A DNA stretch of 64,000 nucleotides from Pavona decussata (Eukaryota): NCBI GenBank assembly GCA_977016875.1, contig CDRNST010000054.1:930001-994000 (forward strand), in the 5' to 3' direction. A program made the translations under genes and the position numbers. The notes beneath the pieces are model-generated. The model did not search any database, was not told the DNA's origin, and saw nothing but the letters and a program-made list of their open reading frames with translations. This document shows, in pieces, positions 5,991 to 32,307 of the stretch. The first letter of the stretch is position 1. Each line of letters opens with the position of its first letter.

Positions 5991-7244
5991 ATTTAAAGAG
6001 GGGACATTCCGTTTAAATGTTTTGCCAAACTCAAAACTCTCTATAATCTGTCCGCATGTTGCAACTTCCCTGGCTGTAACAGATGACAGTCTCTCTGATA
6101 ATGAGCGTTATGAAAATTTTTGGATTGTAGATGAGGCCAGTTACCACTCCTGTAATGTCAGCAAAAGCATCGCAAAGGACAAAAATCTCTTGAAATGCGA
6201 CAATCCAGCAAAACTGAAGTTTGAGAGGCTGAGTTTTCAGTCATTTAGGGCGGACTCGGACCTTAAATTCATTCCTGAAAAAACATATTACTTTGTCTGT
6301 GAGTATCAAATCCATTATGCAATTCTTATAAATAAATTATTAAATACATGTAAGCTAAGTGTTTTAAACTGGACAGTAATAATACTCTGTACTGTGCCAG
6401 TAACTTAATAGCTTGAATTTATAGTTATCCAATCCTAACCCTAATTTAATGTTTAAAATTGTGCAGCCTTCTTGTAGTGTTTTGTTGCTATAGTAGTACA
6501 TTTAGGCAGCAAGAGAAACATCCCATACATGTACATACATCAGTGCTGAAGGAAGCCATAAATCTTTGACTGTTAATGAAAAGATGGTCCTGCTGTTTAA
6601 ACTGCAGTCTGGCTTTTTTTCTACAGAGGAAAGAGAGAGAAACAATAAAGCTTGATATATGTACACTTACATGTACACATTTTAATATTTAAAGTGCCAA
6701 ATGACTGGCAGCCCCATCAATCAATGTAATATAGTTGGTATGTTATCTCATAGTATGACCTAATCAGAATTTACCGCCAGTGGTTACAAATGTATTTCTA
6801 TTTGACTTATCAAAAGTCTGCCAATTGCCAACAAGTTAATTTTAATCAAAGAACTCAGTACAAGAGGAGCTTATCTGTAATGATTTTTTAAACTCAATTT
6901 GCTGCGGTAAAAGCATTTCTATCGATGGTTAAATCAGCCCACTTACAATGGGATTACAGCTGTACATACAAAATTGATTACTTGGTTATATTCCAAAATT
7001 TAACCTAAAACTGCATATAGGCCCTTTTTCCACTCAGCCCTTCATTTTTTTTTTTTTTTAACCAAACAGAAAAATTACAAGAAATGTAGCTTAAGGAAGG
7101 TGCTTACTTTTGTTACTGTGCATATGTTCTGCACATCTTGAGATACTCGGGTTTCCTGTGAGTGGTGCCTACTAATACAGGGATATTTGGCGTGGTTTAA
7201 AACTATGCAAAGAAAGCAGAACTTGGCAAGTGCTCTTGGCATTT

Positions 7245-7275
<31 letters not shown>

Positions 7276-10200
7276 CAGAGATAATAAAGCTTCAATTTGA
7301 TAAAAAAAAAAATGCCATTCATTGCTTTGTATTAATTTTAGCATATCTTAGAATTATAAAAAATATGTGGTTACCCCCAATTTTCTTTTTGGATTCCAAA
7401 TGTCCCTTGCTAAGATTGACTTTTCCCGCATAGTAATAAACTGTGCAAAATACCTCCGTGTTAGTAGGCACCATCCTTAAACTAAAAAAAAAAAAAAAGA
7501 GCTCTGGGGCTGAATGGAGCAGCTATTAATTTATTTTTTGGTTTCATGTTTTAGCAACCTCAACTGGGTCTAAGACCTCTCTGGACAGTAGAAGCAAAGG
7601 ACACTGTGAGACAAATAACATGAAGTTGCAAATATACATTTGCAAAGATTCCCAGGGTATGTTGCCATCTAATAACATTAGATATTGATTTGCTTTTATA
7701 GGGCTGGCCTTCCCCACAGAGATGCACAGAAACATTTCTTTGTATTTTTATGTCAAACCCTCATGATTATTCATCAAAGATAGAAAATTTTCAAATTTTT
7801 GAAAACGATTGGCCACAGGGTACTACAGATGTAGATAGTTTGATGGCTTGTATCATTTTCACATTTGTGTTCCTGTTTCATGTGGAAAGGGAAAACAATG
7901 AAAATGATTGTCCGGTAAGAATGCAAAGTGAAAAATTAATGTGAATTTTGAAAACACAAACTTGCATCCTTGTAGACTGCGTGGCACTTAATCATATAAT
8001 AGTAATGTCTCCACAAATGTATAGATATTACAGTTGGCAGTAAAGTTTGTCACATTGGTTGGTGCTTTCATGTATTTTATCTCTTTAAGCCCCTGGGTGG
8101 CCAATGATTAGCCAGCCGGCATATCTAATAATTATTTATATCTACATGATCAAAGATTTAGGTCACGAGAAACAAAGTTAAGATTAATCTTGTTGCAATG
8201 TAAAAAAATTAATACAACTTCCCCTTACCAGTAGCATATTATGTAGCATATATTAGTGACCAGTGAGGAAAAATATCATATTGAAGCTTAGTCAGACTAC
8301 TATCGATTTAGTGCTTTCAAAGACATGTCAGTGAGAGATGAAATTAATGCGAATTTTAAAAATTTGCGTTAATTTAAGTCGCATTAATTTTTGTTAATGT
8401 TAATTTCCACATAATTAATTAAGTGGTGCATTAATTTCTGCGACCTTAATTTCCATTCTTTTCACCCGAAATTCTTGACACACTCCTGAAAGGATAAAGC
8501 CTTGTTTAATCAGGGTGGAGATCCATTGGTATCATGGACACTGTGAATAATGCTCAAAGTGACCAGATACCTTCATTTAACCTCTACGTTAAGGGACAAT
8601 TCTACGAACATTGTTTCCATTTTGCATTGTTACACTTAGGGTCAAAATAAATTTGTTCCTGTTGTCTCAACAAAGTCTGTTTCTGTAAGTCGTATTAATC
8701 TCCCTTATTTTGAAATCTTAGCGCCTCTTTCATGTTAATTACCTTTATTGGGAAGTAATTTTCCTTCATTCCCATTAATTTAAGTCGCGTTAATTTCCAG
8801 TTGATACTTTAATTAACGCAAACATTAATTTCCTATAATAAGGTATCACCGGCGGAGATTTTAACACAATACAGAAATTATTTGAGGCCAATTTTAAATG
8901 TGCAAAAAAGCTGTCTAATTAATGAGTCAGCTGAGGTTTTCTTAGCTTCATCCCTGCTTACAATGGATGTTGTTTACTTTTAACTGCTAGATGTACACTG
9001 TTCTGAAGCCAAACCGACAGTGCCTGTGATGTCTGCAGTTGATCATGAGAGCATTGTAAAAACGACTACAGCATCTATTACAACAACCAAACAAACCAGT
9101 ACTGTGCGGCGTGTTTCTACAACTTTGCCGCCTTTCACCAAGGCACATATCACTCAGCCACCTAAGGGACCTGATGTGAGCGAGGTGAAAAAAGGAGAGG
9201 AGGAAACCAACAATACAGTGGCTCGTAGTAATCTAGGTATAAATCATAGCTTTTTTGTCTGTTGAGGGGCACCAAATTCAATGCACAGAAGATTAGGGAT
9301 ACCCTTGTGAAGGTCACACCTTGGAAACCTGTTGCCTTGACGTAAAGCCAGAAACACACTAAATTTTTATAGTATGTGGTAAAATTGTTCTTTGTCTCAA
9401 TAATTACTGAAGCGGGCACACCCTGGGCAAAATGAAACATTGTCTTGTTAGATTTTGGATGTACCAGTTTATGAAAGCAACAATAGGATCCCTGCAGTAG
9501 TGGAGATACTCGCTGATTTTCAGCATTGGCCATTACAAATAGTAATTTAATTGCTTAGTGTGTTGTTGGCTTCCTGACAGGAACCCATTAGCATCAGAAA
9601 ACCAAGGAACTGACACAGGGTACTCACACTCAGATGCCTAACTTTTTGTTTTGTGCACTAATCTTGTCTACCCTGGGTTCCAAACAATTCACTCAACCAG
9701 TTAGTAGCTAGTTATGAGATGGTTTGGTATAATAATAATAATGAGCCAAAGGTGCTCCTCTTTGCCAAGTGAAATGAAGACACACAACGTCAAGTTTGGA
9801 TCACTAAACCCAAACACCTGTTCATAGACTTTCTACGGTAGATTGTCCATGCTGATACTGGAACTTAAAGACTTTGGTAAATAAGACTGTCTTTTGGCAT
9901 GAAAAAAGCAAGCCCCACAATGAGAGAAGAGAGTGCCAGTTAGTCTATGAGAGATGTCAAAATAAGATGCAAGTACATGTAGGACAAAAGGGGACAATCT
10001 TGCAATATTTTTGAACTCCCTATAATAAAAAATGCCAGGAGGTGGGGTGGGGATTTTCCAAATTAAAAAAGATGAGGGGTTGGCGTGGGGGAGGAGTGAT
10101 CATTGGAAAAGTCATATTAGGGGACCAGAAACTCATTCCAATGACCTTGCTTGAATTTATTTTCACCCCTAACACAACTGAGTGTACTGTAATGGACTAA

Positions 10201-11305
10201 CATCCTATTGGGGGTGTGGGTAAGGATACTCCTGGCAAGTTGTGCTGGTTTTCCTGTGATGGACTAGCATCCCATCTGGAGTAATAACCCAGTTAATTAC
10301 TCCATGTTACACAAAGCACGCAAACCAGAGCTATTCTGAGTGCTTACACTAATAAAAGTAACCAGACATGTTGAGTGCAGTCTAACACTGTAACTGCAGT
10401 CAGCACAGACGCATTAATGCTAACAAACAAACTAAACAACAAGTTTATTTCCTTTCACAATATTAAGTACATTTAATGGATGGTTGCGCCAACAGCTAGC
10501 AATTTCTTGTTTAAGTTGGCCAGTCATATACAGTTGGACAGAACAATTTTAATTCCATATTTATTTTCTATATTGTATGCTGTGATATATTTATTTTTGT
10601 TATTGGTTTTCTTGCAGCTTCCTTGTGGATAGTAGGCATTGTAATAGTAGTTGCCCTGCTTGCAATTTCAGTAGGACTCAACTTTTGTTTATTCAGGTGT
10701 GTATTTGTTAATTACAGACATTTATCTGATTGACTTATTATTTTAACATATCATTGTCTTCCCAATGTAGACATCAAGGCTGGTGCTAGGAAAGTAAAAT
10801 TTGTTTTGATATAGATCTTGGAAATGATCTAAATTATTGAGAAAAATACAGTAGTGAGTGTTATTTTCACCATCACTGCCACAAAGAAAAAATTGTGATT
10901 CTCTGGGCCAGCTGAGTGGATGACCTTGCACATGCTAGTTGGTGCTCCAACTACAGGAGATAATGTGCTGAGTATTGTCGTAATGACATACATCCTGTAT
11001 GCTGTTAGGATCAGCAATGTTTGAAGTGCCCAGTTTGGTGTTCAAAAATTACCATCTTTCTTTATACATTTAGGACGGTGCCTGCTAATACCAAAGTATT
11101 TTTGCGCGGTTTATAACCATGCAGGAAAAGCAGATCTTAGCAAGGGCTATGGAAATCCAAAAAGAAAATTGGGGGGGGGGGGGGGGGAACCACTCATTTT
11201 TTAGAGAAAATTAAGCAACAATAAATTTATTATTCTAAAAAGCAGTAAAATACAAAGCAATGTATGCAGTTTTTTTCCAAATAATTTGAAGCTTTATTAT
11301 CTCTG

Positions 11306-11337
<32 letters not shown>

Positions 11338-12528
11338 TAATGAATAGAAAGAATAAAATGGAAGGTTTTCCACAGAAGTTGAATACTATATCCATCTGGC
11401 AGTTTCTCGAGGCAAATGCTATGTGCTGATAGTGTCTCTTCAAATGAAATCTTTAATGTCACATGATCAATTTAAACCAATCAGACTCTTTGAAAATTTG
11501 ATGGTTAATTATAAACCAGGGGCGGCTGATTAACGCTAATTTACAGTTAAAAGTTAATCGAGGTTTTCATCTCGCTCTTTAAAAGTAATTTCAAAGAATA
11601 ATTTCAAGCTGAAGGTAAAGAAAAGTCTAAATCAAAACTGAGGGCAAAAACTCTTTTGGAAGAATCTTTATTGATTAGTTATTAAACTCTAATCAAAGTT
11701 CACATTAGTCCAGGATTAGCTTATTCGGGCTTTGAACAACTGGGCCCAGTATTATTTAATAAAGTCTAATTGCTGGGGAATGCAAGATAGAGTGATTTTA
11801 TAGAAGACCTGTCCACCAACTAGTGTCTATTGCTCCCGGGGCAAGGGGGGGGGGGGTACTCCAAAAAAAATTGGATAGGGGTGTGCGGCCCACTTCCCAA
11901 AACCCTTACCCTATTTATGACCAAAGTCTGCGATTTTCCCTACCCTATTTATGACCTGACCCTTAAATCAATACCCTATTTCAGACCTGCCTTATAATTA
12001 TTTCCCTAACCCAGACCAATGTTAAAGGTATGACAAGCCGTTGCGGCACGTACACAGTTGCCGTAAATATCATGATGAAGAAGTAGTTTCTAAAAAAACC
12101 GAATTCAAGACTAGAGTGCAAAAATCGATACCCTATTTATTACCAAAATGGTGGCAAAATGGCTAAAATCGATACCCTATTTATGACCAAACCGGCTGAA
12201 AAACCGTACCCTTTGGTGCCGCACATACCTTTATAGCCCATATAAGCCCCCCGGGCTATTGCTCAGATGACAATGATAGTGTTCTGTTTTGCTTGTTTCT
12301 TTTTGCAGAGGGAGCATATTTAAGATGCTGCTGCCTCGTCAAATTAAAAAATAATAAATCTGAAAATTGCGTAGTGCCATAAACTTGATGATTTTAAGTT
12401 TTGTTACTTCTGTAGATAAATTTGGTTTCAATTTTTTTTGCAGTAACAATAGAAGGAGGAGCAAGAGATCTGATTATGGCAGAGAAGACAGTTGCAAACC
12501 ACTGACAATGCAAACGGCAAATGTGTGA
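5991..12528 (+). CDS. Transmembrane ephrin (ephrin-B-like topology), paralogue 1; 5' signal-peptide exon not found in window
   Basis: Exons 5991-6298, 7555-7656, 8991-9236, 10618-10696 and 12444-12528, all AG/GT-bounded and in phase (2,1,1,1,2). Translation: FKEGTFRLNVLPNSKLSIICP...YENFWIV...YHSCN...LLKCDNP...FQSF...YYFVSTSTG...GHCETNNMKLQIYIC (ephrin receptor-binding domain with 4 canonical Cys), a Thr-rich stalk, a TM helix LWIVGIVIVVALLAISVGLNFCLF, and tail SNNRRRSKRSDYGREDSCKPLTMQTANV*. Confidence 0.85.
7095..7476. mobile_element. Kolobok-type non-autonomous element (family also at ~11073 and 25673)
   Basis: TTAA|GGAAGGTGCTTACT ... TTAGTAGGCACCATCC|TTAA: TTAA duplication and purine-purine start. 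Colinear with 25673-26065. Confidence 0.75.
11073..11337. mobile_element. Truncated, inverted copy of the same Kolobok-type family
   Basis: Starts GGACGGTGCCTGCTAATACC and matches the reverse complement of the right half of 25673-26065. Confidence 0.65.
11520..11746. mobile_element. PIF/Harbinger-type MITE (family also at 14035, 43347 and partial at ~4065)
   Basis: CAG|GG... CTTTGAACAACTGGGCC|CAG. The interior is colinear with 14035-14276 and 43347-43585; the left TIR is partly deleted. Confidence 0.7.
11835..12255. mobile_element. Non-autonomous DNA transposon with CCCGGG termini and a perfect 8-bp target-site duplication
   Basis: CTATTGCT|CCCGGGG ... CCCCGGG|CTATTGCT (11827-11834 = 12256-12263), with repeated internal ACCCTATTTATGACC motifs. 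Confidence 0.85.
12309..12354 (+). CDS. Candidate alternative terminal exon of ephrin paralogue 1 (tail RGSIFKMLLPRQIKK*)
   Basis: Long polypyrimidine tract and TTTTGCAG acceptor at 12308. With the phase-2 donor at 10696 it reads R-G-S-I-F-K-M-L-L-P-R-Q-I-K-K-stop. Confidence 0.4.
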
Positions 12529-14034
12529 TAAAATACTCAAAAGAATTTTATAAAATAATAATAAAATTTTAATATTATTGAAGGGCTCAGGGTAAAAGTG
12601 TCCTAGTTGACTTTTCAGGAAACAAATGATATTTTGTAACAATTTTTCCTTTAGGAGAGGGGGGGGGGGGGGGGTAAGCAACTGTTTTAGCCCTTTGAAC
12701 ATATATTGTATATTTCTCATTAGTGATTCCCATATATCTCTTGTGATACTAGTTGAAAGAGTTTGTTTGAATATCAAGACATTTGTCTTATTTGATCGTT
12801 TATTTTGTTCTCATAACTAGTGCGTCTGTATGACCAGGTAGACATATTGTAAAGGGACATTAGATGCTGGATAGTATTGGTTACTACTAGTAATAATTAT
12901 TATTAGAGATGAAAGCTGAAAAGTTGATATGACAATCTTAACCCTGAGCCCTCCAATTACAGATAAAAATGTATGCAAATGTGTATTTTGTGTTGCAAGC
13001 AAATTTCCAGCTAGTTTTATTAGCTACAACTGCACTTGAGGCTTTGTTTGCAATTACAATTTTAAGCTTTCTATAAAATGATTATTTTATTAAAATAATA
13101 TAACAGTTTCGTTTTTTTAGGCAAATGAAAATGCAAAAAAAATTAAATAAATAAATAAACCTAGGTCCATTTGTTTGAGTTTTTTATTAAATTAACCTAC
13201 ATGTACAGTTGCACATGTCTGACAATTCTGGTAAGGTAAAGATGTAAATTTTGAGAAATGTTCATATTTCGTAGCACAAAAATTAGACGTACATAGCCTT
13301 GGATTTTGTCAATGCATCTGTACACTCTACTTCTCAATCCATACTTGTTTTTGCTCTGTTTTGCTTTGACTGGCGGGATGAAAGAGTGATGTTGCAATTG
13401 AGTTTGTATAGTCATCTGTAAAGTTCAAATTCCTACGTTACTAAGCACTTATTATAGGATAGTTTAAGAAGTAGCATCTGAGTGTTTTTCCATAAGTTAG
13501 TGTTTGGGAGTTAGAAATAAGCTTAAATACGGTACACAATAGCAATATTAGTTTTGTATTAGTCAGTGATATAAAGAGGATTTCGGGTTGGGGGGAAGGG
13601 GTCCGTAAAGGCCAAAAAAATGTACAGGAAAGTATTAGACTAAACTGGAATTTTCAGAGGGGTAGGGTGATCTTGGAGATATTCCTTCCTTGGGGGAGGA
13701 TGGATGTTATCTGGAACTATACATTATAGAACAAAGTTCAATATGCACACTCTATGAGCAGAGCCCCTCTTGACTCCCCAGTGAATGGACAGGAGAGTGT
13801 AGAAAGGCTTTGCTAACAGTGTGTAGGATCTGGTGTTTTGCCAAACCAGTTTCAGAGTTTATATATAATTTACATATAAACTGATCAATAAATTTGTTTT
13901 TGCTTCAAAAATATGTAGAATTGTAAACGCTATTTATGTATCATTTGGGACGCTATTGACAGTCTTGCAGTCCTTATTACAGTTATTATTTAAATTGATG
14001 GTCGATTGGAAGTCTTAGGTCCTTTAAAGGCCTG

Positions 14035-14276
14035 GGCCCGGTTGTTCGAAAGGCAATTAACCCTAATTCACGATTAAAAGTTAATGGATGGTTTTATCTC
14101 GCTCGTTAAAAATAGTTTTAAAGGCTAATTTCAAGCTAACAGTAAAGAAAAGTCTACGTCAAAACTGAGCTACTATAATCTTTTGGAAAAATCTTTATTA
14201 ATAATTAGTAATTAAACTCGAATTAAAGTTTACGTTAACCCATAATTAGCTTAATCGGTATTTGAACAACTGCGCC
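14035..14276. mobile_element. PIF/Harbinger-type MITE
   Basis: CTG|GGCCCGGTTGTTCGAA ... TTGAACAACTGCGCC|CTG: 3-bp CWG duplication. Confidence 0.8.
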
Positions 14277-14901
14277 CTGGACGATGTTGCATGCAGTTTC
14301 TGAATACGCTACCTCAGACTATGTAGCTATTGTTGGGGTAAATACACCACAACTGTATTTACCTGTAGTGTTGCACCACGAACTGTGCCTTATCTTTTGT
14401 AAGAATTTGGAACAAATTGTAAAATAAGCAGCAATTAATATATAGTGTTTCAGCGTACGTAGTTTAATAGGAAAGCTTGGTGCGGTAAACTTTTGAGTAA
14501 CGCATTGTGCGGCGGGCTAACGTTGGCTTCAGATTTCTTGAGAATTGGATTCTCTGTTGAAAGTATGCCCATATCAGGGTGTCTTTTGTCAATACAATAA
14601 CCTGAATAAAGACTAAAACAGTGCTTGCGTGAACAATAGTAACAAAAATCTGATTTGGAATGAACAAACATTTGAAACACTCCTAGCATGGATACTTCAA
14701 ATTGGCCCCAAGCTTATTGACGCTGATTCTCGTTTTAAAAATATTCTTGCTTAATGTTGTAGTAAGATTTTAAGGCCGAATTAATAAAAAAAGATAAGCA
14801 GTTAAATAAGTCTTGTGATTTTACGCAAAAAATATAGTTGATACAAGGGCAGCGGCAACGCTTTATAAAGGGTTGGCGACGTTGAAATGCCATGGGGTGA
14901 C

Positions 14902-15085
14902 GGTCGTTTTTGTACTAGAGGACGCATTATCCATCTGGACGAATTTGGGCAAACATTCGTTCGTCATGTTAAGTTCGCCCAGACGGATGATGCGTCTTGT
15001 GCCCGTCTTTATACTACAGACGAACAACCAATGTTTGCCCAAGTTCATCCAGACGGATAATGCATCCTCTAGTATAAAAACGACC
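14902..15085. repeat. Fold-back (palindromic) MITE-like element
   Basis: The arm at 14902-14965 is the imperfect reverse complement of the arm at 15019-15085. Confidence 0.8.
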
Positions 15086-17444: not shown

Positions 17445-18063
17445 TACTTTTCATTTCTTTTAACCTTTAAACTCTAAACTGAAAAGCAGGGGCCAGATTC
17501 AGCCCCCTAAATTAAGATGCATCCTTTAAGGTGGCCGGGTAAACGTGAATTTGAATGGAATTTTAAGAGGTTTAAAGAAGGGATAAAAGAAAGAAAATGA
17601 TTTTTGGAACACTAACAGACAGTTGATACCCACGCAAGAGCATCCCAGATTGCTAGTGGACTAACTTGGTTTCCGTCTATTAATTATTAACTACAAATTC
17701 TAATTTTAAAACTTCACTAAATCTTCAATATTTCTTATTTCTCTTAATTTTACCAATCCTTCTAGAAAAAACTATCTCCCCCCAAATATACCCAAAAATC
17801 ACCCAAAAATTCACAAAACACCCCACAACATAGATTCACGGGATGAGCAGAGAGTTTTTGGATTGCTTGAAACGTGAACGAGCTGATATTTCCAATTTTA
17901 AGCGGCGTGATAAAGGCTTTCAGATTTACCCCCGCCTCAAGTGCTGTTTCTTAACAATAACCTATTGTTAAGAAGGCTCCATGAATTCGACACCAAGGAT
18001 TCTTGATACCAATTACTAGCATGTTCGCTGTTACAAAAAAAATGTTCGCTGTTACGCTGTAGT

Positions 18064-18107
18064 TAATAAATAAATTAATAAATAAATAAATAAATAAATA
18101 AATAAAT
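18064..18107. repeat. (AAAT)n microsatellite
   Basis: Direct reading of the sequence. Confidence 0.9.
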
Positions 18108-20134: not shown

Positions 20135-23100
20135 ATGAAAGCGTACTTTGCATGGACAGTGGGTGGACATTTGCTTTCTATGTTTTGGTTTCTTGTCGTT
20201 TTTCAGCCTGGATGGAGTAAATATTACCAGTCAATTCAATGGACACCGCAAAACCCTAAGTAAGTTACTGTCTTCAATTTATAATTAAGCTAATACTATA
20301 AACCGTTCACTTCGAATCAGCAGCTCATTTCGGCATAGATTTCATCCGCAGACTCCAAACTTTAAGTACTAGGAAGAAGCTAGGGGCCATTGGAAAGTTT
20401 TACTTTCATGTGATAGGATTTCATCCATCTGAAGAGTCGAGGCAAGAGAAGAAAAGAACTGGAATGCATGATTCTAGAATGAAATCAATGGCCATAACCC
20501 ACTATAGCTATAATTAAGTCTTAAATATGCTACTCCCAGGTGGAGTACTCTTGGGAAGGTACAAAGTATTGTTTTAAAGACGCCCTGTTTATATTTTCAT
20601 GGGTACTTATCTTCGGTGTGTAAGATAACTCGAGGATAGGTATTTTCCATACCTTGGCATGTAAGATAACTCTGGCATGCACTTTGTCATGCCAGCCTAG
20701 GCCGTGGCAGGGGGGGGGGGGGGGGGTTGGGTTACTCCCATAATTTTTAGCTGGCAGTGTGCCGCTGGGACTCTGAGAAACTTAACCTATACTAGACCAT
20801 GTTAACCTTTATTTTGCAGCCCTATTCTAGAGCATACACTGAAAATCCCTACCTCATCCTAGGCATCGTACTACCCACAGTGCAGATTTTTAATTAAAAT
20901 GTGATTTATCAGGACACTTTCTCAGACTAAACATTCACATTCAACTCCATGGACACTTGAACAAAATCAATGTTCTTACTAATATACAGTTGATGTTCGG
21001 TTTCCAAACAAGATGCTTGACTGTATAGGTATACCTCAATGCTTTCAAGTTTTGCTGTTGAAATACTAAATATATGCAATATGGATCAAGGTATTACTCT
21101 GTGGAGCTGTTTTCTTGAACTTGACAAAAGCATTTGATTTCATGTTAACCATGCCACACAATGCTACTCAATAAGCTTTCGGCCAGGGTGTTGTTTGGTT
21201 CAAGTCACATCTGTCAAATCAGTATCTGTGGACATGTTGTGGACCAGTTATGTCCAACACTCTCCTATGTAATTTGGGAGTTCCACAGGGCAGCATTCTA
21301 CTAGGCCTGCTCCTCTTCATTACTAAACATAAATGATCTGCCCAATATTCTTTACCATGTTTATGTCTCTCTCTATGCTGATGGCACTGTTTTATATTAG
21401 TTCTCCACTGCTGTTAAGTGAGTTGGAATAACAACTTAATTCAGATGTTGCACGTAATTTGTGATTGTCCCTACTTACCGCTCTTTTACTTAACAAAACT
21501 TGAAACTTTGTTGTAAAGGAAACCGCAATTCTGCCTTGTCTTGATGTGCCAAATGATGTGATCACCCTGTGAGACATACATTGTGATTGGTTTCTAATAA
21601 TTTATTATTGGATGTAGCAAAAATGTTAAAAGTTCATTAAAGAATGGTATTAATCATAGTGCTCTGCACCAGAGGGTTTTTCTTGTGGCTTCCCCTCCGG
21701 CCAATCCCAAATCGTTGCGGCACATGAGAAAAAACTTTAAGGTACCCAAGGCAACAATGTCATCTGAGGACTAGTTGTGGAATATATTGTGGAACATACA
21801 TGTAACATCACCTTTATATTTGTTAATATTCAGTGCTCAACATATATACAGTAATAATTTGTGCATCATTCATTCATTCATTCATTCATCTTTTATTTGC
21901 CCCAATCTTTATACAATCAATAGGTTTTCTACATTGTACATATATATTGTTGGCAGGAGATCCCAGCAAGTTTTTGCAAACTTTTCTTTAGGGGATCCCC
22001 TATTTCTTAATATTTTCTATTGTTATATAATTTGATAGCTGTCAAATATATATACGTACCTAATTAACATTAAGATTAATATTAGGATTATAGTAGTAAA
22101 AGATTCTGATGGCGATGTCGGTAATTTAAACTTTATGTACTGATGTCTGAGCAATAGATCTGCTTCACTTTCCGCTTAAATGAAAAGTAGGATTTAGCAT
22201 CTTTCACCTCATCAGGGAGATTATTCCACAATTTAGCACCTCTAGCTTTCAGAGAGAATTTTCCATAATTTGTTCTAGTATACCGCATATGTAACTTTGC
22301 TGAAGATCTTGTATTATACTGATGAAATTGTTTGTTTTGTACAAAATAGCTTTTAAAAGTATTTGGTAACATGTCTGCTCTTTGTGAGTACATAAAAAGA
22401 CTAGTTAGAAAAGTATTAAGCTGGAATATGTCTAGTATTTTTAGTTGTTTGAACAATGCAGTAGTTGAGTCTTGGTATCTTGAGAAAGTCATGAGACGAA
22501 TAATTTTTTTCTGTACCTTGTGAAGACATTTTAATGTGGATGCATAATTACTACCCCATACAATATTACAATAGGTAAAATAAGGATATATCATTGTGAA
22601 GTAAACATTTTTTAAAGTAATTTTGTTTACATAGTGTCTTAATTTGGCTATAATACCAGACAATTTTGATGTCTTATTACTTAAGTAGTTAATGTGATTT
22701 TTCCAAGTCATTTTATTTATTATTACTTTTAAGCTATTAAATTTATTTCTGTACTTTTTATATTTCTGTTCATTAAAAATTGATGGACTTTTAAGATATC
22801 TTTTATAAAGAATATTTTTCTTTTTCCTAGATATAAGGAATCCTTTCGTAATCCATGGCTTCTTTTTATGGTTTATTTTGTTTAGTGTTACTTTCTTGGT
22901 GGGTAGATGAGTGTCATATATCTCTTTAAATTGTTCCATAAAATTATCGTATGCTTCTTGAGGATTTTCTAGGTTTGTTATTTTCTCCCAGTTAGTTTTA
23001 GCTAATTCATCTTTTAATTTTTTCAAAGTTTTTTTATTAATGATTCGTATATTTTGTTCTATCGGGTCATGTTTTGTATCTAGTTTATCCATTGTTATAT

Positions 23101-25667
23101 AGAATATAAGAAGATGGTCTGATAGATCGGATATCAAGATGCCTCTTTTACTGTTTTATTTGGACTATTTATAAATATGTTATCTATTAAGGTAGCTGAT
23201 TTGTCAGTAATTCTTGTGGGTTTTGTTATTGAAGGAAAAAATGACTATGCATACATTAGGTTTATAAAGTCGTTTATAAAAACATCATCATTAAATTTTA
23301 ATATATCAAGGTTATAGTCACCCATTAAGTAAGTTTCCTTTCCTTCGTTATTAAGGCATTCCAGAGTTTTGGTTAGGTTTTCTTCAAATTTGTTAAATGT
23401 GTTATTGGGAGGTCGATAGATAACTCCAACAATTTTGCTTTTCTTCCCTTTGAACCTTAACTCGATAAACAATGACTCGAATATTTCTTCGTCAAATGTA
23501 CTTAAGTCATCTCTGGCAAGGAGAACAGCGTTATTTTAGAACTGTATTGAACGTGATTCGGTTCATATGATATCTCATGCCCCTTTCAAATATTGTTTAA
23601 TAAAATAATTTATTGTTGATTTTCATTGACAAGTGGACAATAACATGCCTGGACTGAGCTTGTTGGTTTTTTTCCTTTTTTGTTAACTTGCTCCAAACAT
23701 GTTTCTCAGGGTGAGAACCAACATTTTAGAGTAAAGTTCTACAGTTGAGAGAAGCACAGGATTTAACAGTGTTTATGCATTTGATGGTTTTCAGCAATGG
23801 ATGAACTGAGAACAAGTGATAATGTCTTGAATGTTAAATCATGGTCCTTATTTAATCTGTTATTCTTTCAAGGTTCCAATTTACAAAGAAGCAAATCCAA
23901 GATAGTAAAGCTTATTATCGATTGCCTGTGCTTCCAAACGATAGGGTAGCATTTGTCTGCCCCAACCCATCAACTTACCTGAATGATGTCCAACACCCAG
24001 TCCCTAAAAATGTCAAACTTTATGAGAACATATGGTACGTGGACAAGGAAAGTTTTCAAGCTTGTGAAGTTGGAAGCCTCAAAGGGAAAGGAATCAACCA
24101 GAAATGGCTGGATTGTGACACTCCTTCAGTACTTAAATATGACTGGCTTGCATTTGTTTCTTTCAATCCCACAAATGCTTTGTCACTTCAGCCTGGCACT
24201 GAGCATTATTTCATTGGTAAGTTGAATGATTCTTGCTCAAAGCAGTTTGCTGTTTTCATGGATGCGCTTCAAGCTGCACCCACTTTGGTTTTAAAATACT
24301 GTGGTGAACAAAATAGAAAAAAGAAACCTGCAACTAATTGTATTTTTTCAGTCAGTGTCACAAATATACTTGGATAAAGGAAATTCAATTTGTCATGTTC
24401 AGGTGACTTATTTGGCAAGTGTTCCATCGGTGAAGTCGTGTAGTGCTAAACAATTTCTAAAAGAAATTTTAGATAGAAAATGAATAAGATTTGACAGTAC
24501 ACATGTATGCGCCCACAAAAATGTTTATTAAGTTCTTTTCCTCTGGGGGTATGAAGACTTGAAGAATAGCAAAATTAATATGTTTGTGAATGAGCACAGT
24601 AATGGTACATGTTGAGCAGCCTTAACATCATGCTTATGATAGAAGAGGGAGAAGCTAGACTGGGCCAGCAGTTGTTTCCATCATCAAAATGTAACATGCA
24701 CAATGCATAGCTGTACACAATAAAGTTAACATACATGTAGTTATAGCAAAGCTGCACAATCCAGTTCAGTGCACATAAGCAAACATTATAGTATTGTTAA
24801 GCATGTCTATTTTTCCCAGTAATCTTCAGGGTTTTCATCATCCATTTGTACTGGCAATGTTATGCAAGAATGGAATGCTTTTAAGCAATACTTTTGTTAG
24901 TGACTTTTTTGTATAGGTAATCACATGATTTCGAGTTCAATTTGGGATAAATCAGCATGAGTAAATCTTTTTGTAGTCTTTGAAAAATTTACAAGTGCTG
25001 ATTTATCCCAAATTGCACTCGAAATCATGTGATTACTTTTTAATAATATATATGCAAAAATTTGACTCTGTTTTCCTCTTATCATGTTTATTTCGTGTCA
25101 CGGCTCACTGCTCCCGCCTACATTAACGTTATTGGTTAAAAAATGACAACCTTGATTGACATGCTAGCACTTGTGGAAACTTACAGACCAAAAATATCCT
25201 CTCAATCGACAAAGATCAAGTTCTCGAAGCATTTATCATTCTAAAGTGTTTACATTTTATGGACCTCAAGGAGAAAAGAGGTGTGAAAAGAAGTCAAAAC
25301 TTGTTTATTTAAAGAAGTCAACTTGTTATTGTTTGTTGTCGAATTTAATTGAGGTGAAATAGATCAACATTTTCTAAACTTGAAGCTTTTCGAACTTATG
25401 AATTAGTGAGAAATACTGTCCTCGCCAGGGGATGTGGCTGACTGTGGCTTTGCGGGAGCTGCTGTGTTTCCCATGTTGAAAGTGACTTGACATTAGTGGA
25501 AATGGTTTATGTTCATGAAACTGATGCTGATCCTGATTCTAGCCAGAGATATAACTTGGCATATGAAACGTTGCAAAAACTGCTTGGTTGAAGTTGTTTC
25601 CACGTTGAGCCGACTGAGGGTCTGGCAAGAACGGGTTGAAAATATTGCTGGAGCTGCTGGTGTTACT

Positions 25668-25717
<50 letters not shown>

Positions 25718-25824
25718 GAGATACTCGGGTTTCCTATGGGTGGTGCCTACTAATACAGGAATATTTTTGCGCGGTTTAAAACTATACGGAGAAAGCAGAA
25801 CTTACCAAATGCTTTTGGTATCTC

Positions 25825-25855
<31 letters not shown>

Positions 25856-28800
25856 CAGAGATAATTAAGCCTTAAGTTAGGAAAAAATCCCATACATTGC
25901 TTTATATTTTGGTGCTTTTTAGAGATATTATTGCCTAGTTATCTCTGAAAAATGCCTGGTTAACCCCAATTTTCTTTTTGGATTCCAATAGCCCTTGCTA
26001 AGACCTTCTTTTCCCGCATAGTCATAAACCGCACAAAAATACTTCGGTATTAGTAGACACCGTCCTTAAAGCTGTTTCCTTGAGCTAACTGGATGTTGAT
26101 GTTTTTAGCGTGGCTGATGGTGTGGGAAAGCTGTTGCTGTTCTCTTTCATCTCCTTCGTCATAGTCATCCAGTGACTTCTCGTTTCTGTGGTCCGTTATC
26201 GCAACCTCGCTCCAGGCCTGCTGTCTTCAACTTCTTTACCTTCTTTACAACTGTTTTCCTGGTGCTGTGGTTTGTAAAGGTCTTCAATGAATCTTCTAAG
26301 GTCATTCCTTTGATGACAGACTTCATCATGTCGTTGATTTTGTTCACTTCCATCGGCTGCCGCTTATACCAAACTTGCGAGGACGGATTTGGCACACAAG
26401 ACAGATTAAGTGGACCGGTTGTCCGTATTTCGTGAGGATGACGCCACAGAAACTCTTTGAAGATTGCAACGGGACGTCTGTCATCTCCAGTTGCAAACAT
26501 TTTTGGAAGGAAGCTTCTGGGCTTTGCGGACAGTCCAGACTGGCGTGTTTTTGTGGGGTTCTCGATGAATTCAACGTACTCCGTGTTGTTTTCATCCAAT
26601 CCAAAGGAGAAATCTTCAACCGTCATGCTGTGGTGTTCCTGTCGACCTCGAAGACCAAAATATTGGGTCAGAAGCCACCAAACTGTTTGGACAAGGACTT
26701 GCGGACTTCCCTTTCCCTTTCTTTTTTTTTTTCCCACAGCTCATTTTCCTCGGTTGTTGTCAGACTTCTCACCTTGTTCGGCCGCTTGCCTTTGCCTTGT
26801 TGCCGCAGTAGGCGGGCTTTTCCCTCCAGAACTTGCTTCAAGCTTTTAAACTCTCTTTCGCCAATAATTGAGTGTTTGTACTCTTTCTCTGTTAGGTATT
26901 GGTCAATAGCAGTCACCATTACACGAAGGTTATCAGGCTCATAATCTTCCCCATCTTTCTTATGAACTGTTGCGTAAAACTCCTCCAGAATTTTGTTCAG
27001 GGCCTCCGGTTCGTACTTTTTAATACTTTCGTCATAGCCCTTTTGAGAAGCTCAAGACTTCCAGACTTTAAGCCAATTATTTGTGCTTTGTTCGGTGTTT
27101 TTGTTCGTAGCATTCTCCTTCAAATTATGAATTAAAAGGTTGTTACTTTCTCGTAACCTGTCCGCCATTTTGTGTTGTTTCGCTTTCGCAACTTTCCTGT
27201 TAATCAATTTAATTTCAACTTGCTACACTCAATTTCAACTTTCTGCACTGTTTGGGATTAATTGACGTGCTCTCAGCCAATGAGCATGCTGAAAATTTTG
27301 CATGTACATTATTAGCCTTGAAATCGAAATTGCTGTGAACAATTTCTTTTTGGCACACAGACTGTTCTCATGTTTACAAGAACCCTAGTTCTTCATCATA
27401 TCATATTACAGTTTTTGAGCCATTAAATACTTTAAGGCCAAGAAATAGCCAATTTTTTTAGCTATAAACTGAATCAACTCAAGCACAGCATTAATGGAGC
27501 AACAAAAGAAATATCAGTCAAGCACCAGTTTCTCTTTTATGCTGGTGGCTTGTGCTTTAAAGAAAAGTAAGAACTCAAGGTAATTCCTTGTTTATTTGTT
27601 ATCCTTTTGCTCAAACACTAACAACAGAACCAAATTTCTTACATGATAATCAGTCTCTGTGCCAAACTAGAGCTTATTTCAAATAATGGAACAAATTATT
27701 TTGATTTCAAGGTAGAAGAGTCACTTTTATTTTAGTCTTGCATGTAGTTCCAAGAAGACTACATTAACCCTTTAACCCCTAAGGTAAAACGACATTTTCT
27801 CCAGATCCAAGACTACAAACTCAATGTCCATGTATGATATACCATTTTAAAGCTACTAATGAGTGTATTTCATAACTGATATAATCATGAATGAGAAAAG
27901 TTATAGCTTTGAGATAAATGGCCTTAAAACGTAAAAATTTTAAAGTTCAAAAACGTCCCAATCCTTGTGTATGTTAGGTATACCCCTGAACTATTATATA
28001 TAGCTTATTTTGCAGTTCTCAGCAAGTTCATTAATGTGAGAGATGTCTTAAGACCCACAACTTCTAGGGGGAAAAAGTTGAAAAGTTATGGGGGTGGTCA
28101 ACCATATCATATATGGGAGGGGGTTATGGTTTTATCCTTTTAATGAGTAGATCTTCACAACACTATCTTGGTGTCAAAAATTCATAGAAATCTGTCAAGT
28201 ATTGAAAGAGTTATGGCATTATGTGCCATTTGGCACTCTTAGGGATTAAAGGGTTAACATTTGATAATTTCTGAAAGGGTTATTTTGTCAAAAAAGTGTC
28301 TGTATTTTACCTGCATATATAATAATATATAAAATTTTTGAATAAGAGTTAAAAAAATAAGAAAATAAACTTTTTAACCATTAATTTCGGCTTCAGAAAA
28401 ATGTGCACCTGCTGCATTGTGTATATATTAGGTTGTAGGGATACCACACATACTGATAGTGTTTATTTTTTGATTAATTTATTTACTTACCTCCAATTTC
28501 TCATCTGTTTAAAATTATTTTACTTATTTTTTCTTTTAATTTGATTCAAATTTCAGCAACAAGTAATGGTTCTAGCAATTCCCTAGACAATAGATCAGGG
28601 GGACACTGTAATGATTCAGGAAGTGGCATTTCAATGAAGATCATTGTCTACGTTTGTTACAATGCTACAGGTGTGTGTTATAGCTGGTGAATGGTAACTT
28701 TGAGATTTTGTGATGGATGGCAATTAAGAATTTGTGTGATTTTTGTTATTAAGTCTTGTTTATTTTTGTTTGTAGATCCTGCATGTAATGTACTGAAAAC

Positions 28801-31800
28801 AGGTCCCCCGACAGAGAATAATTCAACCACGCTCAAACCAGATCTGGCAACACAGGCCTTGAGGACATCACTCTCAGACAGTAAGTGTTGGGGCCAAACA
28901 GGAATGGGCTCGTAAGTGAAAGGGGTGGTGTAAATGACAATGGTAGTTCAAAATATAATCAGGCCCAAGACCCCTCACTGATTGTCATCATTGAAAGAGT
29001 TGACTGTATAATCCTGTGTTACTCCAAAAGTATCCTGGAATAAGCAGCTAAGTTCTAATTTCAAATTTTGGATAGATAGGGTAGGAGGTGCTTATTTAAG
29101 GTGAGGGGTGGGGGAGGGGGGGGGCTGGAATCTGCAAGATGCAGAAACAAACTGGTTTCTTGTTTTGTAGTGATGTAGTCAAGAGGAGTTGGAATTGGGT
29201 TCTGATCGAATTACTGATGAGTGTACAGAATGACTCCAGAGTGATGAAGATGACCAGATTTTTGAGATATACATGTACTTAGCCATTGTTGTCTCATTCT
29301 TCAGCCATTGTGATCCATCCAGAGAGTTAAAGGATTAAGTCAAGGGTAGAAACGATTGTATTGGTATTTTAGGTAACAAAATACGAAAAAACTTCACCCC
29401 ACACAAATACAGTCGAACCTCCATTATCTGGACCTCGATTATCCAGACTATTCGATTATCCGGACTTTTTTCTCTGGTCCCAATTTTTTCATGAATATTA
29501 ATTAGTTGAGATGTTTTGAACTAAAAGTCGCAAAAAGCCCAATAATCCTTTCAAAAGACTGTTGAAACAGCGTATTATCCTGTGCACTTTTCAAAATTCG
29601 CAAGCGTGACGAGACAAAGAAATATTCTGATCATGCGTTCAGCTGATATCTGATTTGCTCAATTATTTTGTGGCCAAGGAAATTTAATGCTCGATTAGGT
29701 GCTTCCGTGTGGTTTATATAAACACACGAGCGATCGATCGTAAACTCAAATCAGAAACATGTCTACGAAGCGAAAGCGAGCCTTTCTATCGATTAAAGAT
29801 AAGCAGATAATTATTTCATGTTTGGATAAAGGAGAAAAAGGAACAAATTTAGCTCAAGAATTTGGCATCAGAAAGCAGCAGATCTCTGATATACGGAAGA
29901 ACAAAGTCAAGATCCTAAAATTTACTGGGGTGAGCATCGAGACAAGCGAATGATTAAAACAAAAGTTCCTGAAGCTGGCCGATGATGAGCAGTTGGATAA
30001 AGCCCTGTACACCTAGTTTATTCAACAAAGATCTACTGGGAAACCGATTTCATATTTAAAGTCATGTTTTCTTTGCTGTAACCTTTTGTTTACATTTCTA
30101 TCTCATTAATATTCATATTTTCGATTATCCGGACTCTCGATTATCTGGACTATTTACCGCGGTCTGGATGAGTCCGGATAATCGAGGTTCGACTGTAACA
30201 AGAAAAATAAAAATTATGCATAAAAATGCAGCCAGATTTAGTTTTTGGAAAATCGGGGTTAAAATAGAGAAAAGATCAAAAGGTGCTTGTATCCCATACA
30301 GGACAACGGTGGGTTGGCTCTATATGTGGAAGGCTCCCTGATAACCTCTGATAATCCAGCAGAGTTGGCAGATATGCTCTTGTCAAGGGCTCACAAATTT
30401 ATCAATAATTTATCATAGATAGTTTTACAAAGCTCACTCAACAGGTAATATGTGATTGGCTACTGCATGTGTAAGAAAAGACATCCAATCTTAATTTTTT
30501 TGTTAATTAAATAATGAAATTTTATTTTATTGTTTACCTTTTAGATGTTTGGCATCTTCTCACCATCATCTTTGGAGTAGGTTTTTCTTGTTGCCTTGTG
30601 GTTCTTAGCTTGTGTCTTTTTGTTGTGTGGTAAGCTATCAACATGCTTGTTGTGTAGTTGTTGTGTAGTGACAGTGGGCATTTTTTTCCATGGGGGTGGC
30701 GTGGGGGTGTAAATTCATGGCACTTGACTTCTGGGAGGGAGGGGGGCTGGGAGCATGCTATCCCAGAAAGCATTTCAACAGAATGCATTTAGAATGGCTA
30801 AACGTCATCTAAATATGCTATGCATTATCTTATTTTTAACCAGGTTATTGAAGCAAAATTGAACTACTAGAAAACACAATGGAAATGGCATTAACACAGA
30901 TCAGTAAAATTATGTATGATCCACAGTTGTTCATGCAGTTTTCCTTTCATTAGGCAAACTTATTTGCCACATCGACAAGTGGAATCTGATCAGTTCTTGC
31001 CGGTATTACCACATGGTTAATAAAACCTTTTTTGATTCATGATGTTTGATTGCAACCATGTTTTCACCCTTCTTGCCATTGAGGATGACCTTTCTTTGAG
31101 TTACACTTGTAACAGGATTAACCTGCAGCAAGTTACAAAAACTTCACTAATCATGCATCTCTCATGAACTGCTACATGTAGGTTCTTTACCATTTTCAAA
31201 ATATCAGAAAAGCAATTAGCGGCATTTCTAAATCGTCAGGATTTAAGATTTGTGAGGATGTGTCAATGGAGTTCAGAAGCCTGTGTTATTGTATAGCTGA
31301 ACTGGTCTGCACTGAAAAGGAGCATTCTGGTTGGCTTCCTGAGCGGTTCAAATTTTCCTATATGGACCACTAAGATGGACTGCTTGTGTTACAAAGTCGT
31401 TTGAAAGGAGCAAAGTGCTTCAGTTTTGACAACAACAAAGCAAAAATGTTTTAAATTAAGCTTATTATGTAGGAACTGTTTAAGCCATCATGTCAGAATT
31501 GAAAAGTCTTTCTTGCACTATTTGTTGCACTTGCTACATAACGAAGTTTCATGCAGACTAGAAAGCAACAAGCAGAAAAGCTACGAGCTTGTTCTATCCA
31601 TATTGTTTTTTGTAAGTTTATGGACATGTCTTGCCTTCAGCTTGGTCTACAAGCTTACAAAAAAAGAACTCAACCAACATTTTCCCAATATGGACCTCCC
31701 TTTATTGCGGACACTCTCAGGACCACAAGTTAGTATCCTTAATAGCAAGAGTCCATTATAGTGGGAATTTATTTCAGTCAAATGTCTGTACTTTACTTTT

Positions 31801-32307
31801 GCCTGGAATTTAGCTGTTGTCTGTATCATTGGGGTGTCTGCAATAGCAAGATGTCCGCAGGGCAAGAGTTGACTGTATAATCAAACACTCAAGAAACTGT
31901 TTCGTCTGATTTCCAAGCACCTCAAAGTTGATTTTAAAAAAACGCAGCGGCACCTCATTTTTTTAACCCACATCTCAGCATTTTAAAAAATCAGATGAAA
32001 TACTCTTTGTCGTGTTTGATATATATTACTTCAAAATGATAACCAGTCTGAATGCCAAATCAGAGCTGATCTAGAGAAAATTATATTGTAAGGCCAAATC
32101 AGCACTACTTATGTTGCCCTTTTCCACCAATCCCTCTTTAAGGATGATATACACAACTAACATACTTGCGCTGTTAACCTTGTTTTATGTTTTTACAGCC
32201 GCAGGGAAACTCTTAAACAATCAGAGGGTGAGAAAGACAAGCTTCATCCACAGACAGATGAAAATGGCGTGGAAAATGTGAATGACATGACTGATACCTG
32301 CATCTAG
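20135..32307 (+). CDS. Transmembrane ephrin (ephrin-B-like topology), paralogue 2, 293 aa
   Basis: Exons 20135-20259, 23873-24216, 28557-28670, 28776-28880, 30545-30629 and 32199-32307 sum to 882 nt, open throughout, with GT-AG junctions. Signal peptide MKAYFAW...LLSMFWFLVVFQPGWS, then IQWTPQNPKF (ephrin WxxxNPxF motif), VCP...YENIWYV...QACE...LDCDTP...HYFIATSNG...GGHC...MKIIVYVC, a short stalk, TM WHLLTIIFGVGFSCCLVVLSLCLFVVC, and a tail ending DTCI*. Confidence 0.9.
21020..21460 (+). pseudogene. Heavily decayed non-LTR retrotransposon reverse-transcriptase fragment
   Basis: Frameshifted motifs GAVFLNLTKAFD (~21103), GVPQGSIL/GLLLF (~21279), INDLP and LYADG, which are typical CR1/L2-group RT motifs. 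Confidence 0.7.
21864..23520 (-). mobile_element. CR1/L2-group LINE remnant, 5'-truncated, RT core deleted, (TGAA)n 3' tail
   Basis: ORF 23245-23472 has APE endonuclease motifs (IVGVIYRPPN, LMGDYNLD). ORF 22133-23137 begins with the SDH motif, includes KPWIT, then jumps to the C-terminal region (TWKNHI, YCNIVWG, KLWNNLP). An ATTC microsatellite lies at 21864-21890. Confidence 0.85.
24914..27314 (-). mobile_element. Decayed Crypton (tyrosine-recombinase DNA transposon; DUF3504/ZMYM/KIAA1958-like)
   Basis: Frameshifted ORF from ATG ~27168: KARLLRQQGKGKRPNK, GLRGRQEH (catalytic R), PTKTRQ, WYKRQPM, FTNHSTR (HxxR), and in another frame HRNEKSLDDY (H...Y). Terminal palindrome at 24917-25036. Confidence 0.8.
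25673..26065. mobile_element. Kolobok-type non-autonomous element nested in the Crypton
   Basis: TTAA|GGACGGTGCCTACTA ... TAGTAGACACCGTCC|TTAA. Confidence 0.85.
27768..28253. mobile_element. piggyBac-type MITE
   Basis: TTAA|CCCTTTAACCCCTAAG ... CTTAGGGATTAAAGGG|TTAA. Confidence 0.85.
29410..30195 (+). mobile_element. Internally deleted pogo/Tigger transposon with a CENP-B-type HTH remnant
   Basis: TA|CAGTCGAACCTC ... GAGGTTCGACTG|TA. ORF 29759-29953 MSTKRKRAFLSIKDKQIII...LAQEFGIRKQQISDIRKNK continues past stops into QLDKALYT*FIQQR. No DDD catalytic domain is present. Confidence 0.9.
31690..31875. mobile_element. Partial Tc1/mariner-type MITE (right end)
   Basis: Ends GGCAAGAGTTGACTG|TA and contains TTGCGGACAC/TGTCCGCA motifs. 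Confidence 0.5.

What the first reader, a model, noticed from the sequence alone, without database searches (positions are those of the whole stretch)
5991..32307. Tandem pair of transmembrane ephrins with identical exon phases but unrelated, non-canonical cytoplasmic tails
Seen: two same-strand ephrin genes share exon architecture (receptor-binding exon, STS/ATS-GHC exon, stalk exon, TM exon, tail exon; phases 2,1,1,1,2). Established: bilaterian ephrin-B tails end in a conserved Tyr-rich segment with the PDZ motif YYKV, used for reverse signalling. Here paralogue 2 has a tyrosine-free acidic tail ending D-T-C-I (class I PDZ consensus S/T-x-hydrophobic). Paralogue 1 has a basic tail with one Tyr ending T-A-N-V. 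Inference: an old lineage-specific duplication giving ligands that engage different PDZ partners and largely lack phosphotyrosine reverse signalling.
Basis: partly seen in the sequence, partly recalled or inferred. Interest (0 to 1): 0.7.

Follow-up and report, generated by a model that had tools for sequence, protein, structure and literature searches.

The report
Tandem coral ephrin gene pair
Two neighbouring genes in a stony-coral genome encode membrane-anchored ephrin cell-contact ligands with short, dissimilar inner tails; they are real and old, but ordinary members of the already known large coral ephrin family.

Summary
Two same-strand ephrin genes lie at 5991-12528 and 20135-32307, with canonical splice sites and phases 2,1,1,1,2. 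Gene 2's receptor-binding exon starts at 23873.

Spliced orthologues from other corals run collinearly through the same exon chain, and none adds a YYKV-type tail. The pair is also tandem in Desmophyllum and in a close relative, and the two clades are sisters, so the duplication is old.

"Non-canonical tails" is not special: this genome has at least 11 ephrin receptor-binding exons in tandem pairs, and no coral ephrin retrieved ends in YYKV. Published work already reports a cnidarian expansion of transmembrane ephrins.

Paralogue 1 keeps one Tyr and an [A/E]-N-V end in 4 of 5 species. Paralogue 2's D-T-C-I end is shared only with the close relative; three more distant orthologues end differently, so a conserved class I PDZ ligand is not supported.

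A new member of a known kind. The scan's other notes on this genome do not cover this locus.

The parts
5991..6298 (+). Gene 1 exon 2: main receptor-binding exon. It enters in phase 2 and leaves in phase 1.
   Evidence: Pfam Ephrin at 36.9 bits. Splice sites read. It is 58-83% identical to orthologues.
7555..7656 (+). Gene 1 exon 3: end of the receptor-binding domain (S-T-S-T-G ... G-H-C ... Y-I-C). Phase 1 in, phase 1 out.
   Evidence: Pfam Ephrin positions 113-140 match at 17.5 bits. It is 94% identical in the close relative.
8991..9236 (+). Gene 1 exon 4: Ser/Thr/Pro-rich stalk. Phase 1 in, phase 1 out.
   Evidence: Collinear with the Oculina, Desmophyllum and transcript-derived orthologues.
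10618..10696 (+). Gene 1 exon 5: transmembrane helix (25 hydrophobic residues). Phase 1 in, phase 2 out.
   Evidence: mean hydropathy 2.86. Orthologous TM exons were found.
12444..12528 (+). Gene 1 exon 6: 28-residue basic cytoplasmic tail with one Tyr, ending T-A-N-V, plus the TGA stop.
   Evidence: The Tyr is kept in all five species and the [A/E]-N-V end in four (Oculina, Desmophyllum, close relative and this one).
20135..20259 (+). Gene 2 exon 1: ATG, signal peptide and the Q-W-T-P-Q-N-P segment. The donor leaves 2 bases (phase 2).
   Evidence: tblastn of orthologues P0024, P0026 and P0028. Sequence and GTAAGT donor read. It is 81% identical in the close relative.
23873..24216 (+). Gene 2 exon 2: main receptor-binding exon.
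   Evidence: Pfam Ephrin at 22.1 bits for this exon alone. Orthologues are 61-85% identical. The acceptor position is shared by all paralogues.
28557..28670 (+). Gene 2 exon 3: A-T-S-N-G ... G-H-C ... Y-V-C, the end of the receptor-binding domain.
28776..28880 (+). Gene 2 exon 4: short stalk (35 residues).
   Evidence: Collinear with P0026, P0028 and the close relative.
30545..30629 (+). Gene 2 exon 5: transmembrane helix, the most conserved exon of this gene.
   Evidence: It is 93% identical in the close relative with dN/dS 0.14, and 75-82% identical to P0028 and P0026.
32199..32307 (+). Gene 2 exon 6: 36-residue acidic, Tyr-free tail ending D-T-C-I, plus the TAG stop.
   Evidence: The internal motif (E-K-D-K-L-H ... 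E-N-V) is conserved. The stop position is shared only with the close relative.

Best explanation
These are two intact, anciently duplicated, tandem genes for type I transmembrane ephrins, of 315 and 293 residues. Each has six coding exons: signal peptide, two exons for the Eph-binding domain, stalk, transmembrane helix and a short cytoplasmic tail.

Shown: they belong to a coral ephrin family of at least 11 genes, mostly arranged as tandem pairs, in a genome that also has at least 12 Eph receptor ligand-binding exons.

Inferred from the family: they sit on the cell surface and activate Eph receptor kinases on touching cells (forward signalling).

Shown: their tails do not carry the vertebrate ephrin-B module of several Tyr plus YYKV, which is the normal state for coral ephrins.

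Inferred: any reverse signalling would run through short paralogue-specific motifs. For paralogue 1 these are a conserved Tyr followed by x-R and a C-terminal [A/E]-N-V. For paralogue 2 they are a strongly conserved transmembrane helix and an acidic E-K-D-K-L-H ... E-N-V stretch. Its D-T-C-I end is a recent, narrowly distributed C-terminus.
For: Family membership:
- Pfam Ephrin hits on the exons and on full-length orthologues.
- The best solved relatives are ephrin-B2 ectodomains, E = 3e-6.

Gene models:
- Canonical splice sites, and the CDS sums to a multiple of three in both genes.
- Orthologous full-length proteins run collinearly through all exons. One sits on a 1325-nt intronless contig and must be a spliced transcript.

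Family size:
- 10 further or confirming PF00812 exon hits in the genome, all with the same two-exon split of the domain.
- 12 Ephrin_lbd (PF01404) exon hits.

Age of the pair:
- The same tandem pair in Desmophyllum and in a close relative.
- Sister clades in the exon-2 tree.

Selection against the close relative:
- Receptor-binding exons: dN/dS 0.30 for gene 1 and 0.44 for gene 2.
- Gene 2 TM exon 0.14 and tail exon 0.44.

Tails:
- Compared.
- PMC6993872 reports that cnidarian ephrins are all transmembrane and greatly expanded.
Against:
- Gene 2's receptor-binding exon alone scores below Pfam's cut-off, and the joined protein was not searched.
- Gene 1's stalk, TM and tail exons have dN/dS of about 1 or more against the close relative (small samples). 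That part is weakly constrained apart from a few residues.
- Receptor binding and any signalling are inferred from family membership only.
- In Oculina no gene 2 orthologue lies within 10 kb downstream, so the tandem arrangement is not universal.
Confidence: 0.88

Rival explanations
1. The two tails are specialised PDZ ligands for different partners: class I T-x-I for paralogue 2 and x-N-V for paralogue 1. On this view the pair has essentially given up phosphotyrosine reverse signalling.
For: - D-T-C-I fits the S/T-x-hydrophobic rule, and it and its stop codon are conserved in a close relative.
- Paralogue 1 ends in [A/E]-N-V in 4 of 5 species.
- PMC6993872 notes PDZ-like V-x-V ends in some cnidarian ephrins.
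- Gene 2's tail has no Tyr.
Against: - Three more distant gene 2 orthologues end I-D-T-L, T-A-T-A, or nine residues further on. The window has TAG where that transcript has GAG.
- A/E at position -2 is not a class I or class II ligand.
- The single Tyr of paralogue 1 is conserved in all five species.
- No binding data exist.
Confidence: 0.2
2. The tails are little more than stop-transfer anchors. Both proteins act only as forward-signalling ligands, and the tail differences are neutral drift after duplication.
For: - Gene 1's tail exon has dN/dS 1.03, and its stalk, TM and tail together 1.44.
- The tails are short (28 and 36 residues) and start with a basic cluster.
- C-termini vary among gene 2 orthologues.
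- The other coral ephrins retrieved have unrelated tails.
Against: - Gene 2's tail has dN/dS 0.44 and an internal motif kept across distant orthologues. Its TM helix is the best conserved exon.
- Gene 1 keeps Tyr-x-Arg and the terminal N-V across families.
Confidence: 0.3
3. One or both copies are decaying or unexpressed duplicates. Gene 2 is the likelier candidate, because it has transposon-filled introns and a sub-threshold Pfam score.
For: - Gene 2 exon 2 scores 22.1 bits, below the 25-bit cut-off, and is absent from the genome-wide PF00812 list.
- Transposon fragments lie in introns 1 and 2.
- There are no RNA data for this species.
Against: - The frame is open across all six exons and every splice site is canonical.
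- dN/dS is 0.40 over the whole gene.
- Orthologues are expressed as spliced transcripts in other corals.
- All conserved Cys residues and domain motifs are present.
Confidence: 0.04

Closest known systems
Scleractinian ephrins annotated as 'ephrin-B2-like' or 'Ephrin-B2a' (Oculina patagonica P0016, Desmophyllum pertusum P0021)
   Same: They are orthologues of paralogue 1. Exon 2 is 58-66% identical, the exon chain is the same, and the tail is of the same type, with one Tyr and a terminal N-V. In Desmophyllum a paralogue 2 orthologue follows 3.2 kb downstream on the same strand.
   Different: They come from other species. The Oculina model is N-terminally truncated, and no gene 2 orthologue lies within 10 kb downstream there.
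Vertebrate ephrin-B (ephrin-B1, -B2 and -B3)
   Same: They share an Ephrin receptor-binding domain, and ephrin-B2 is the best PDB match. They are also type I transmembrane proteins. From my own memory of the human genes, not tested here, the first intron falls at the same place, just before the Phe after the W-N-S-x-N segment.
   Different: The cytoplasmic tails here are 28-36 residues, not about 80. They have 0-1 Tyr and no YYKV, and they show no sequence match to any solved ephrin-B chain.
The expanded cnidarian transmembrane ephrin family described by Arcas et al. 2020 (PMC6993872)
   Same: All paralogues are reported as TM-anchored, the expansion is large and lineage-specific, and some members have PDZ-like C-terminal ends. 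This genome has at least 11 ephrin and at least 12 Eph ligand-binding exons.
   Different: In the passages my term searches returned, that paper does not mention tandem gene order ('tandem' occurs 0 times), exon phases or paralogue-specific tail motifs. The V-x-V end it mentions is not what these two genes have.

Membership tests
Ephrin (Pfam PF00812) | Eph-binding (ephrin) domain scoring above the curated cut-off | tested here: met
   Gene 1 exon 2 alone scores 36.9 bits against a 25-bit cut-off. Gene 2 exon 2 alone scores 22.1 bits, and its full-length orthologues score 36.8 and 45.6.
Ephrin (Pfam PF00812) | Conserved cysteines and core motifs of the domain (I-C-P, Y-E-N, x-C-x, K-C-D, G-H-C) | tested here: met
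   Alignment A1 has invariant C, P, Y, N, C, C, P and F columns across the own-genome paralogue exons and orthologues aligned. The G-G-H/R-C motif is present in exon 3 of all 11.
Ephrin (Pfam PF00812) | Secretory signal peptide | tested here: met
   Both first exons start with ATG and carry a hydrophobic core: gene 2 at 20135-20259, gene 1 at C54:928598-928725, outside the window. This rests on inspection and on homology to orthologue N-termini. No signal-peptide predictor was available.
Ephrin (Pfam PF00812) | Membrane anchorage (TM helix or GPI) | tested here: met
   Each gene has a hydrophobic stretch of 25-27 residues (hydropathy 2.6-2.9) in its own exon, followed by a basic cluster.
Ephrin (Pfam PF00812) | Binds an Eph receptor | not testable with these tools
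   The genome has at least 12 Ephrin_lbd exons, so receptors exist. Binding needs an experiment.
Ephrin-B class in the vertebrate sense (reverse-signalling tail) | Conserved C-terminal block with several Tyr, ending YYKV | tested here: not met
   The tails end T-A-N-V and D-T-C-I with 1 and 0 Tyr. They have no PDB match to an ephrin-B tail. No Y-x-V terminal exon fits the gene in the region. The orthologous transcripts end in the same exon.
Class I PDZ ligand (S/T-x-hydrophobic C-terminus), paralogue 2 | The motif sits at the extreme C-terminus and is conserved among orthologues | tested here: inconclusive
   The motif is present here and in one close relative. It is absent from three more distant orthologues.

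The most novel reading that the evidence does not exclude
Paralogue 2 may define a coral-specific way for an ephrin to signal backwards without phosphotyrosine or a fixed PDZ end. Its transmembrane helix is more conserved than its receptor-binding domain, and an acidic E-K-D-K-L-H ... E-N-V tail motif is kept across coral families. Both point to a conserved partner in or under the membrane. In one sub-lineage a new stop codon then exposed a class I PDZ-type end (D-T-C-I), adding a second output.
Probability: 0.15. Interest if true: 0.5.

Novelty: new member of a known kind. Interest (0 to 1): 0.24.

Why it matters
The result gives two clean gene models, with exon coordinates and phases, for an ephrin pair that is older than the split between several stony-coral lineages.

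It also shows that in corals the part of the ephrin that varies between paralogues is the tail, not the gene architecture. That bears on whether ephrin reverse signalling predates bilaterians. Here the vertebrate module is absent, and only short paralogue-specific motifs are conserved.

This refines published surveys. It is not a surprise to specialists.

Tried and rejected

2. Searching the joined spliced proteins. Only exon-wise translations were used in scripts, and the tree uses exon 2 only.

3. Gene 1's first exon inside the window. An ATG plus signal peptide plus phase-2 donor scan and conserved-block comparisons with Oculina found nothing convincing. Orthologue N-termini then placed it upstream of the window.

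4. The alternative gene 2 acceptor at 23904-23905. I rejected it because all paralogues and orthologues use the upstream 'AG + 1 base + Phe' site.

5. The alternative gene 1 exon 4 donor at 9175/9176. It is out of phase with exon 5, and the orthologues continue past it.

6. TM and tail exons for the other nine paralogues. The phase-constrained scan found them only for three (G, H, I), and an open-frame scan found one for C. A, B, D and E stayed unresolved, so I make no family-wide statement on anchorage from this genome.

7. Homology between the two tails. The alignment shows only a shared basic start and an E/A-N-V triplet, which is not significant.

8. The large all-protein search (search of protein representatives). 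I did not use it, because the family is not in doubt and its hits carry no taxon names with which to date the duplication.

I met no human-like contigs.
Full report
WHAT IS THERE

The window is G000:C54:930001-994000 of a 602-Mb, AT-rich, intron-rich genome. The closest proteins come from stony corals. Two open frames, at 5953-6405 and 23856-24374 on the + strand, match Pfam Ephrin PF00812. The first scores 36.9 bits, over the 25-bit cut-off; the second scores 22.1 bits, just under it.

I read the exon borders directly from the DNA.
- Gene 1: 5991-6298, 7555-7656, 8991-9236, 10618-10696, and 12444-12528 (the last three bases are the TGA stop).
- Gene 2: 23873-24216, 28557-28670, 28776-28880, 30545-30629, and 32199-32307 (the last three bases are the TAG stop).

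Every acceptor is AG and every donor GT. The tail sequences are also as described:
- Gene 1 has a basic 28-residue tail with one Tyr, ending T-A-N-V.
- Gene 2 has an acidic, Tyr-free 36-residue tail ending D-T-C-I.

CORRECTIONS TO THE MODELS

Each gene has a further 5' exon with the ATG and signal peptide. I located these with the N-termini of orthologous full-length proteins.
- Gene 2's is at 20135-20259, with a GTAAGT donor that leaves two bases.
- Gene 1's is not in the window. It lies at C54:928598-928725, about 1.3 kb before base 1.

With these exons the coding sequences are 948 nt (315 residues) and 882 nt (293 residues), both multiples of three.

Gene 2's receptor-binding exon begins at 23873. 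All eleven paralogues in this genome and all orthologues start this exon with 'AG, one base, then Phe'.

INDEPENDENT SUPPORT FOR THE EXON CHAINS

I did not try to get around that.

Support comes instead from other corals. Word searches returned full-length proteins that run collinearly through every exon.
- Gene 1: P0016 (Oculina patagonica, 'ephrin-B2-like'), P0021 (Desmophyllum pertusum, 'Ephrin-B2a') and P0020.
- Gene 2: P0024, P0026 and P0028.

P0028 sits as an uninterrupted frame on a 1325-nt contig. P0020, P0024 and P0026 sit on contigs of 1.1-1.6 kb. The genomic loci have kilobase-scale introns, so I infer these are spliced transcripts. The exon 5/6 junction of gene 2 falls at the same nucleotide in that transcript. 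None of them adds an exon with a YYKV-type end, and no such terminal exon exists in the region.

HOW OLD IS THE PAIR?

In Desmophyllum the gene 1 orthologue is followed 3.2 kb downstream, on the same strand, by a second ephrin gene. Its exons match gene 2 better than gene 1: 50% against 41% in exon 2, with the same four-residue insertion in exon 3.

Walking along a 3.4-Mb contig of a close relative (dS about 0.2) recovered all exons of both genes in the same order.

A maximum-likelihood tree of exon 2 alone (110 columns, mollusc outgroup) gives three results:
- a gene 2 clade with 100/99 support;
- a gene 1 clade with 83/76 support;
- the two joined as sisters with 88/91 support.

So this is an old tandem duplication, at least as old as the split between this coral and Desmophyllum. 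Whether it predates stony corals was not tested. In Oculina no gene 2 orthologue lies within 10 kb downstream.

FAMILY CONTEXT

The genome has ten PF00812 exon hits over threshold, besides gene 2's sub-threshold one. They lie mostly in tandem pairs on contigs C27, C28 and C54, and all split the domain at the same two places. It also has twelve Eph receptor ligand-binding exons.

Arcas et al. (PMC6993872) report that cnidarian ephrins underwent a 'huge expansion' with a transmembrane region in all paralogues. They also report that YKV is the vertebrate ephrin-B motif, and that some cnidarian ephrins have a PDZ-like V-x-V end.

No coral ephrin I retrieved (Acropora, Montipora, Porites and unnamed transcripts) ends in YYKV, and their tails differ widely. 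So 'non-canonical tail' describes the whole coral family, not this pair.

THE TAILS

Paralogue 1: across five species the tail keeps a basic start, one Tyr followed by x-Arg, a Ser/Pro stretch and a hydrophobic end. That end is A-N-V here, in the close relative and in Desmophyllum; E-N-V in Oculina; and D-H-L in P0020. Against the close relative, however, the tail exon has dN/dS 1.03, and stalk, TM and tail together 1.44. The receptor-binding exons score 0.30. The samples are small (27 codons for the tail, about 127 for the three exons together). Constraint therefore seems limited to a few residues.

Paralogue 2: every exon is under purifying selection, with the tail at 0.44 and the TM exon at 0.14. 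The TM helix is its best conserved exon. It is 93% identical to the close relative and 75-82% identical to P0028 and P0026, against 61-78% for exon 2.

An internal acidic motif (E-K-D-K-L-H ... E-N-V) is shared with P0024 and P0028. The C-terminus is not stable:
- D-T-C-I plus TAG is shared only with the close relative.
- P0028 has GAG where the window has TAG, plus three extra bases, and runs nine residues further.
- P0024 ends I-D-T-L and P0026 ends T-A-T-A.

A conserved class I PDZ ligand is thus not supported. A recently acquired one is possible. The two tails have no significant similarity to each other or to any solved chain.

MOST LIKELY FUNCTION

These are cell-surface ephrin ligands that engage the coral's Eph receptors on touching cells. 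This is inferred from family membership; the best solved relatives are ephrin-B2 ectodomains. What the tails do is open. My ranking:
- short paralogue-specific motifs with some function;
- pure anchors shaped by drift;

Pseudogene status is unlikely given intact frames, dN/dS below 1 in the binding domain, and expressed orthologues.

VERDICT

The finding is real and accurately read, but ordinary. It is a new member of a known kind. Mild points of interest are the conserved TM helix and acidic motif of paralogue 2, and the stop-codon shift that created D-T-C-I.

Noticed in passing
window 22133-23472 (- strand), inside intron 1 of gene 2: Likely non-LTR retrotransposon fragment. A 334-residue open frame has no Pfam hit, and next to it a 75-residue frame weakly matches the endonuclease-reverse transcriptase family PF14529 (E = 7e-4, below the cut-off).
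   Followed up: partly
window 26165-26737 (- strand), inside intron 2 of gene 2: A 190-residue open frame carries DUF3504 (PF12012, 64.9 bits), probably a mobile-element relic (my inference). Intron 2 is 4.3 kb here but only about 0.5 kb in the close relative (L037:8274-8788), so the intron is far longer in this species, possibly through this insertion.
   Followed up: partly
A Lys-rich N-terminal frame at 35719-36054 may be its first exon. Conservation of the ephrin-ephrin-BYSL order in other corals was not checked.
   Followed up: partly
window 62239-63211 (+ strand): A Kazal-type inhibitor domain exon and an immunoglobulin I-set exon lie close together. They may belong to a follistatin/agrin-like or IgSF gene.
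   Followed up: no
G000:C28:832679-898433, C27:3252578-3535896, C54:1074236-1074532: Nine further ephrin receptor-binding exons lie mostly in near-identical tandem pairs (A/B, D/E, F/G, H/I). For A, B, D and E my scans found no TM exon. Open frames with fibrinogen-domain-like sequence (by eye; no Pfam run) follow B about 2 kb and D about 11 kb after exon 3. These four may be secreted or GPI-anchored, which would conflict with the published statement that all cnidarian ephrins are transmembrane.
   Followed up: partly
P0022 (288 residues, transcript-derived gene 1 orthologue from another coral): It diverges from P0020 just before the TM helix and ends without one. This may be an intron-retaining or alternatively spliced secreted isoform.
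   Followed up: no
L011:9965-10267 (Oculina patagonica): The annotated 'ephrin-B2-like isoform X1' model starts inside exon 2. The exon extends 36 bases further upstream, and a signal-peptide exon is missing from the model.
   Followed up: partly
G000: C85, C7, C144, C47: There are at least 12 Eph receptor ligand-binding domain exons, seven of them clustered on C7:323776-534238. The receptor family is therefore also expanded and clustered.
   Followed up: no
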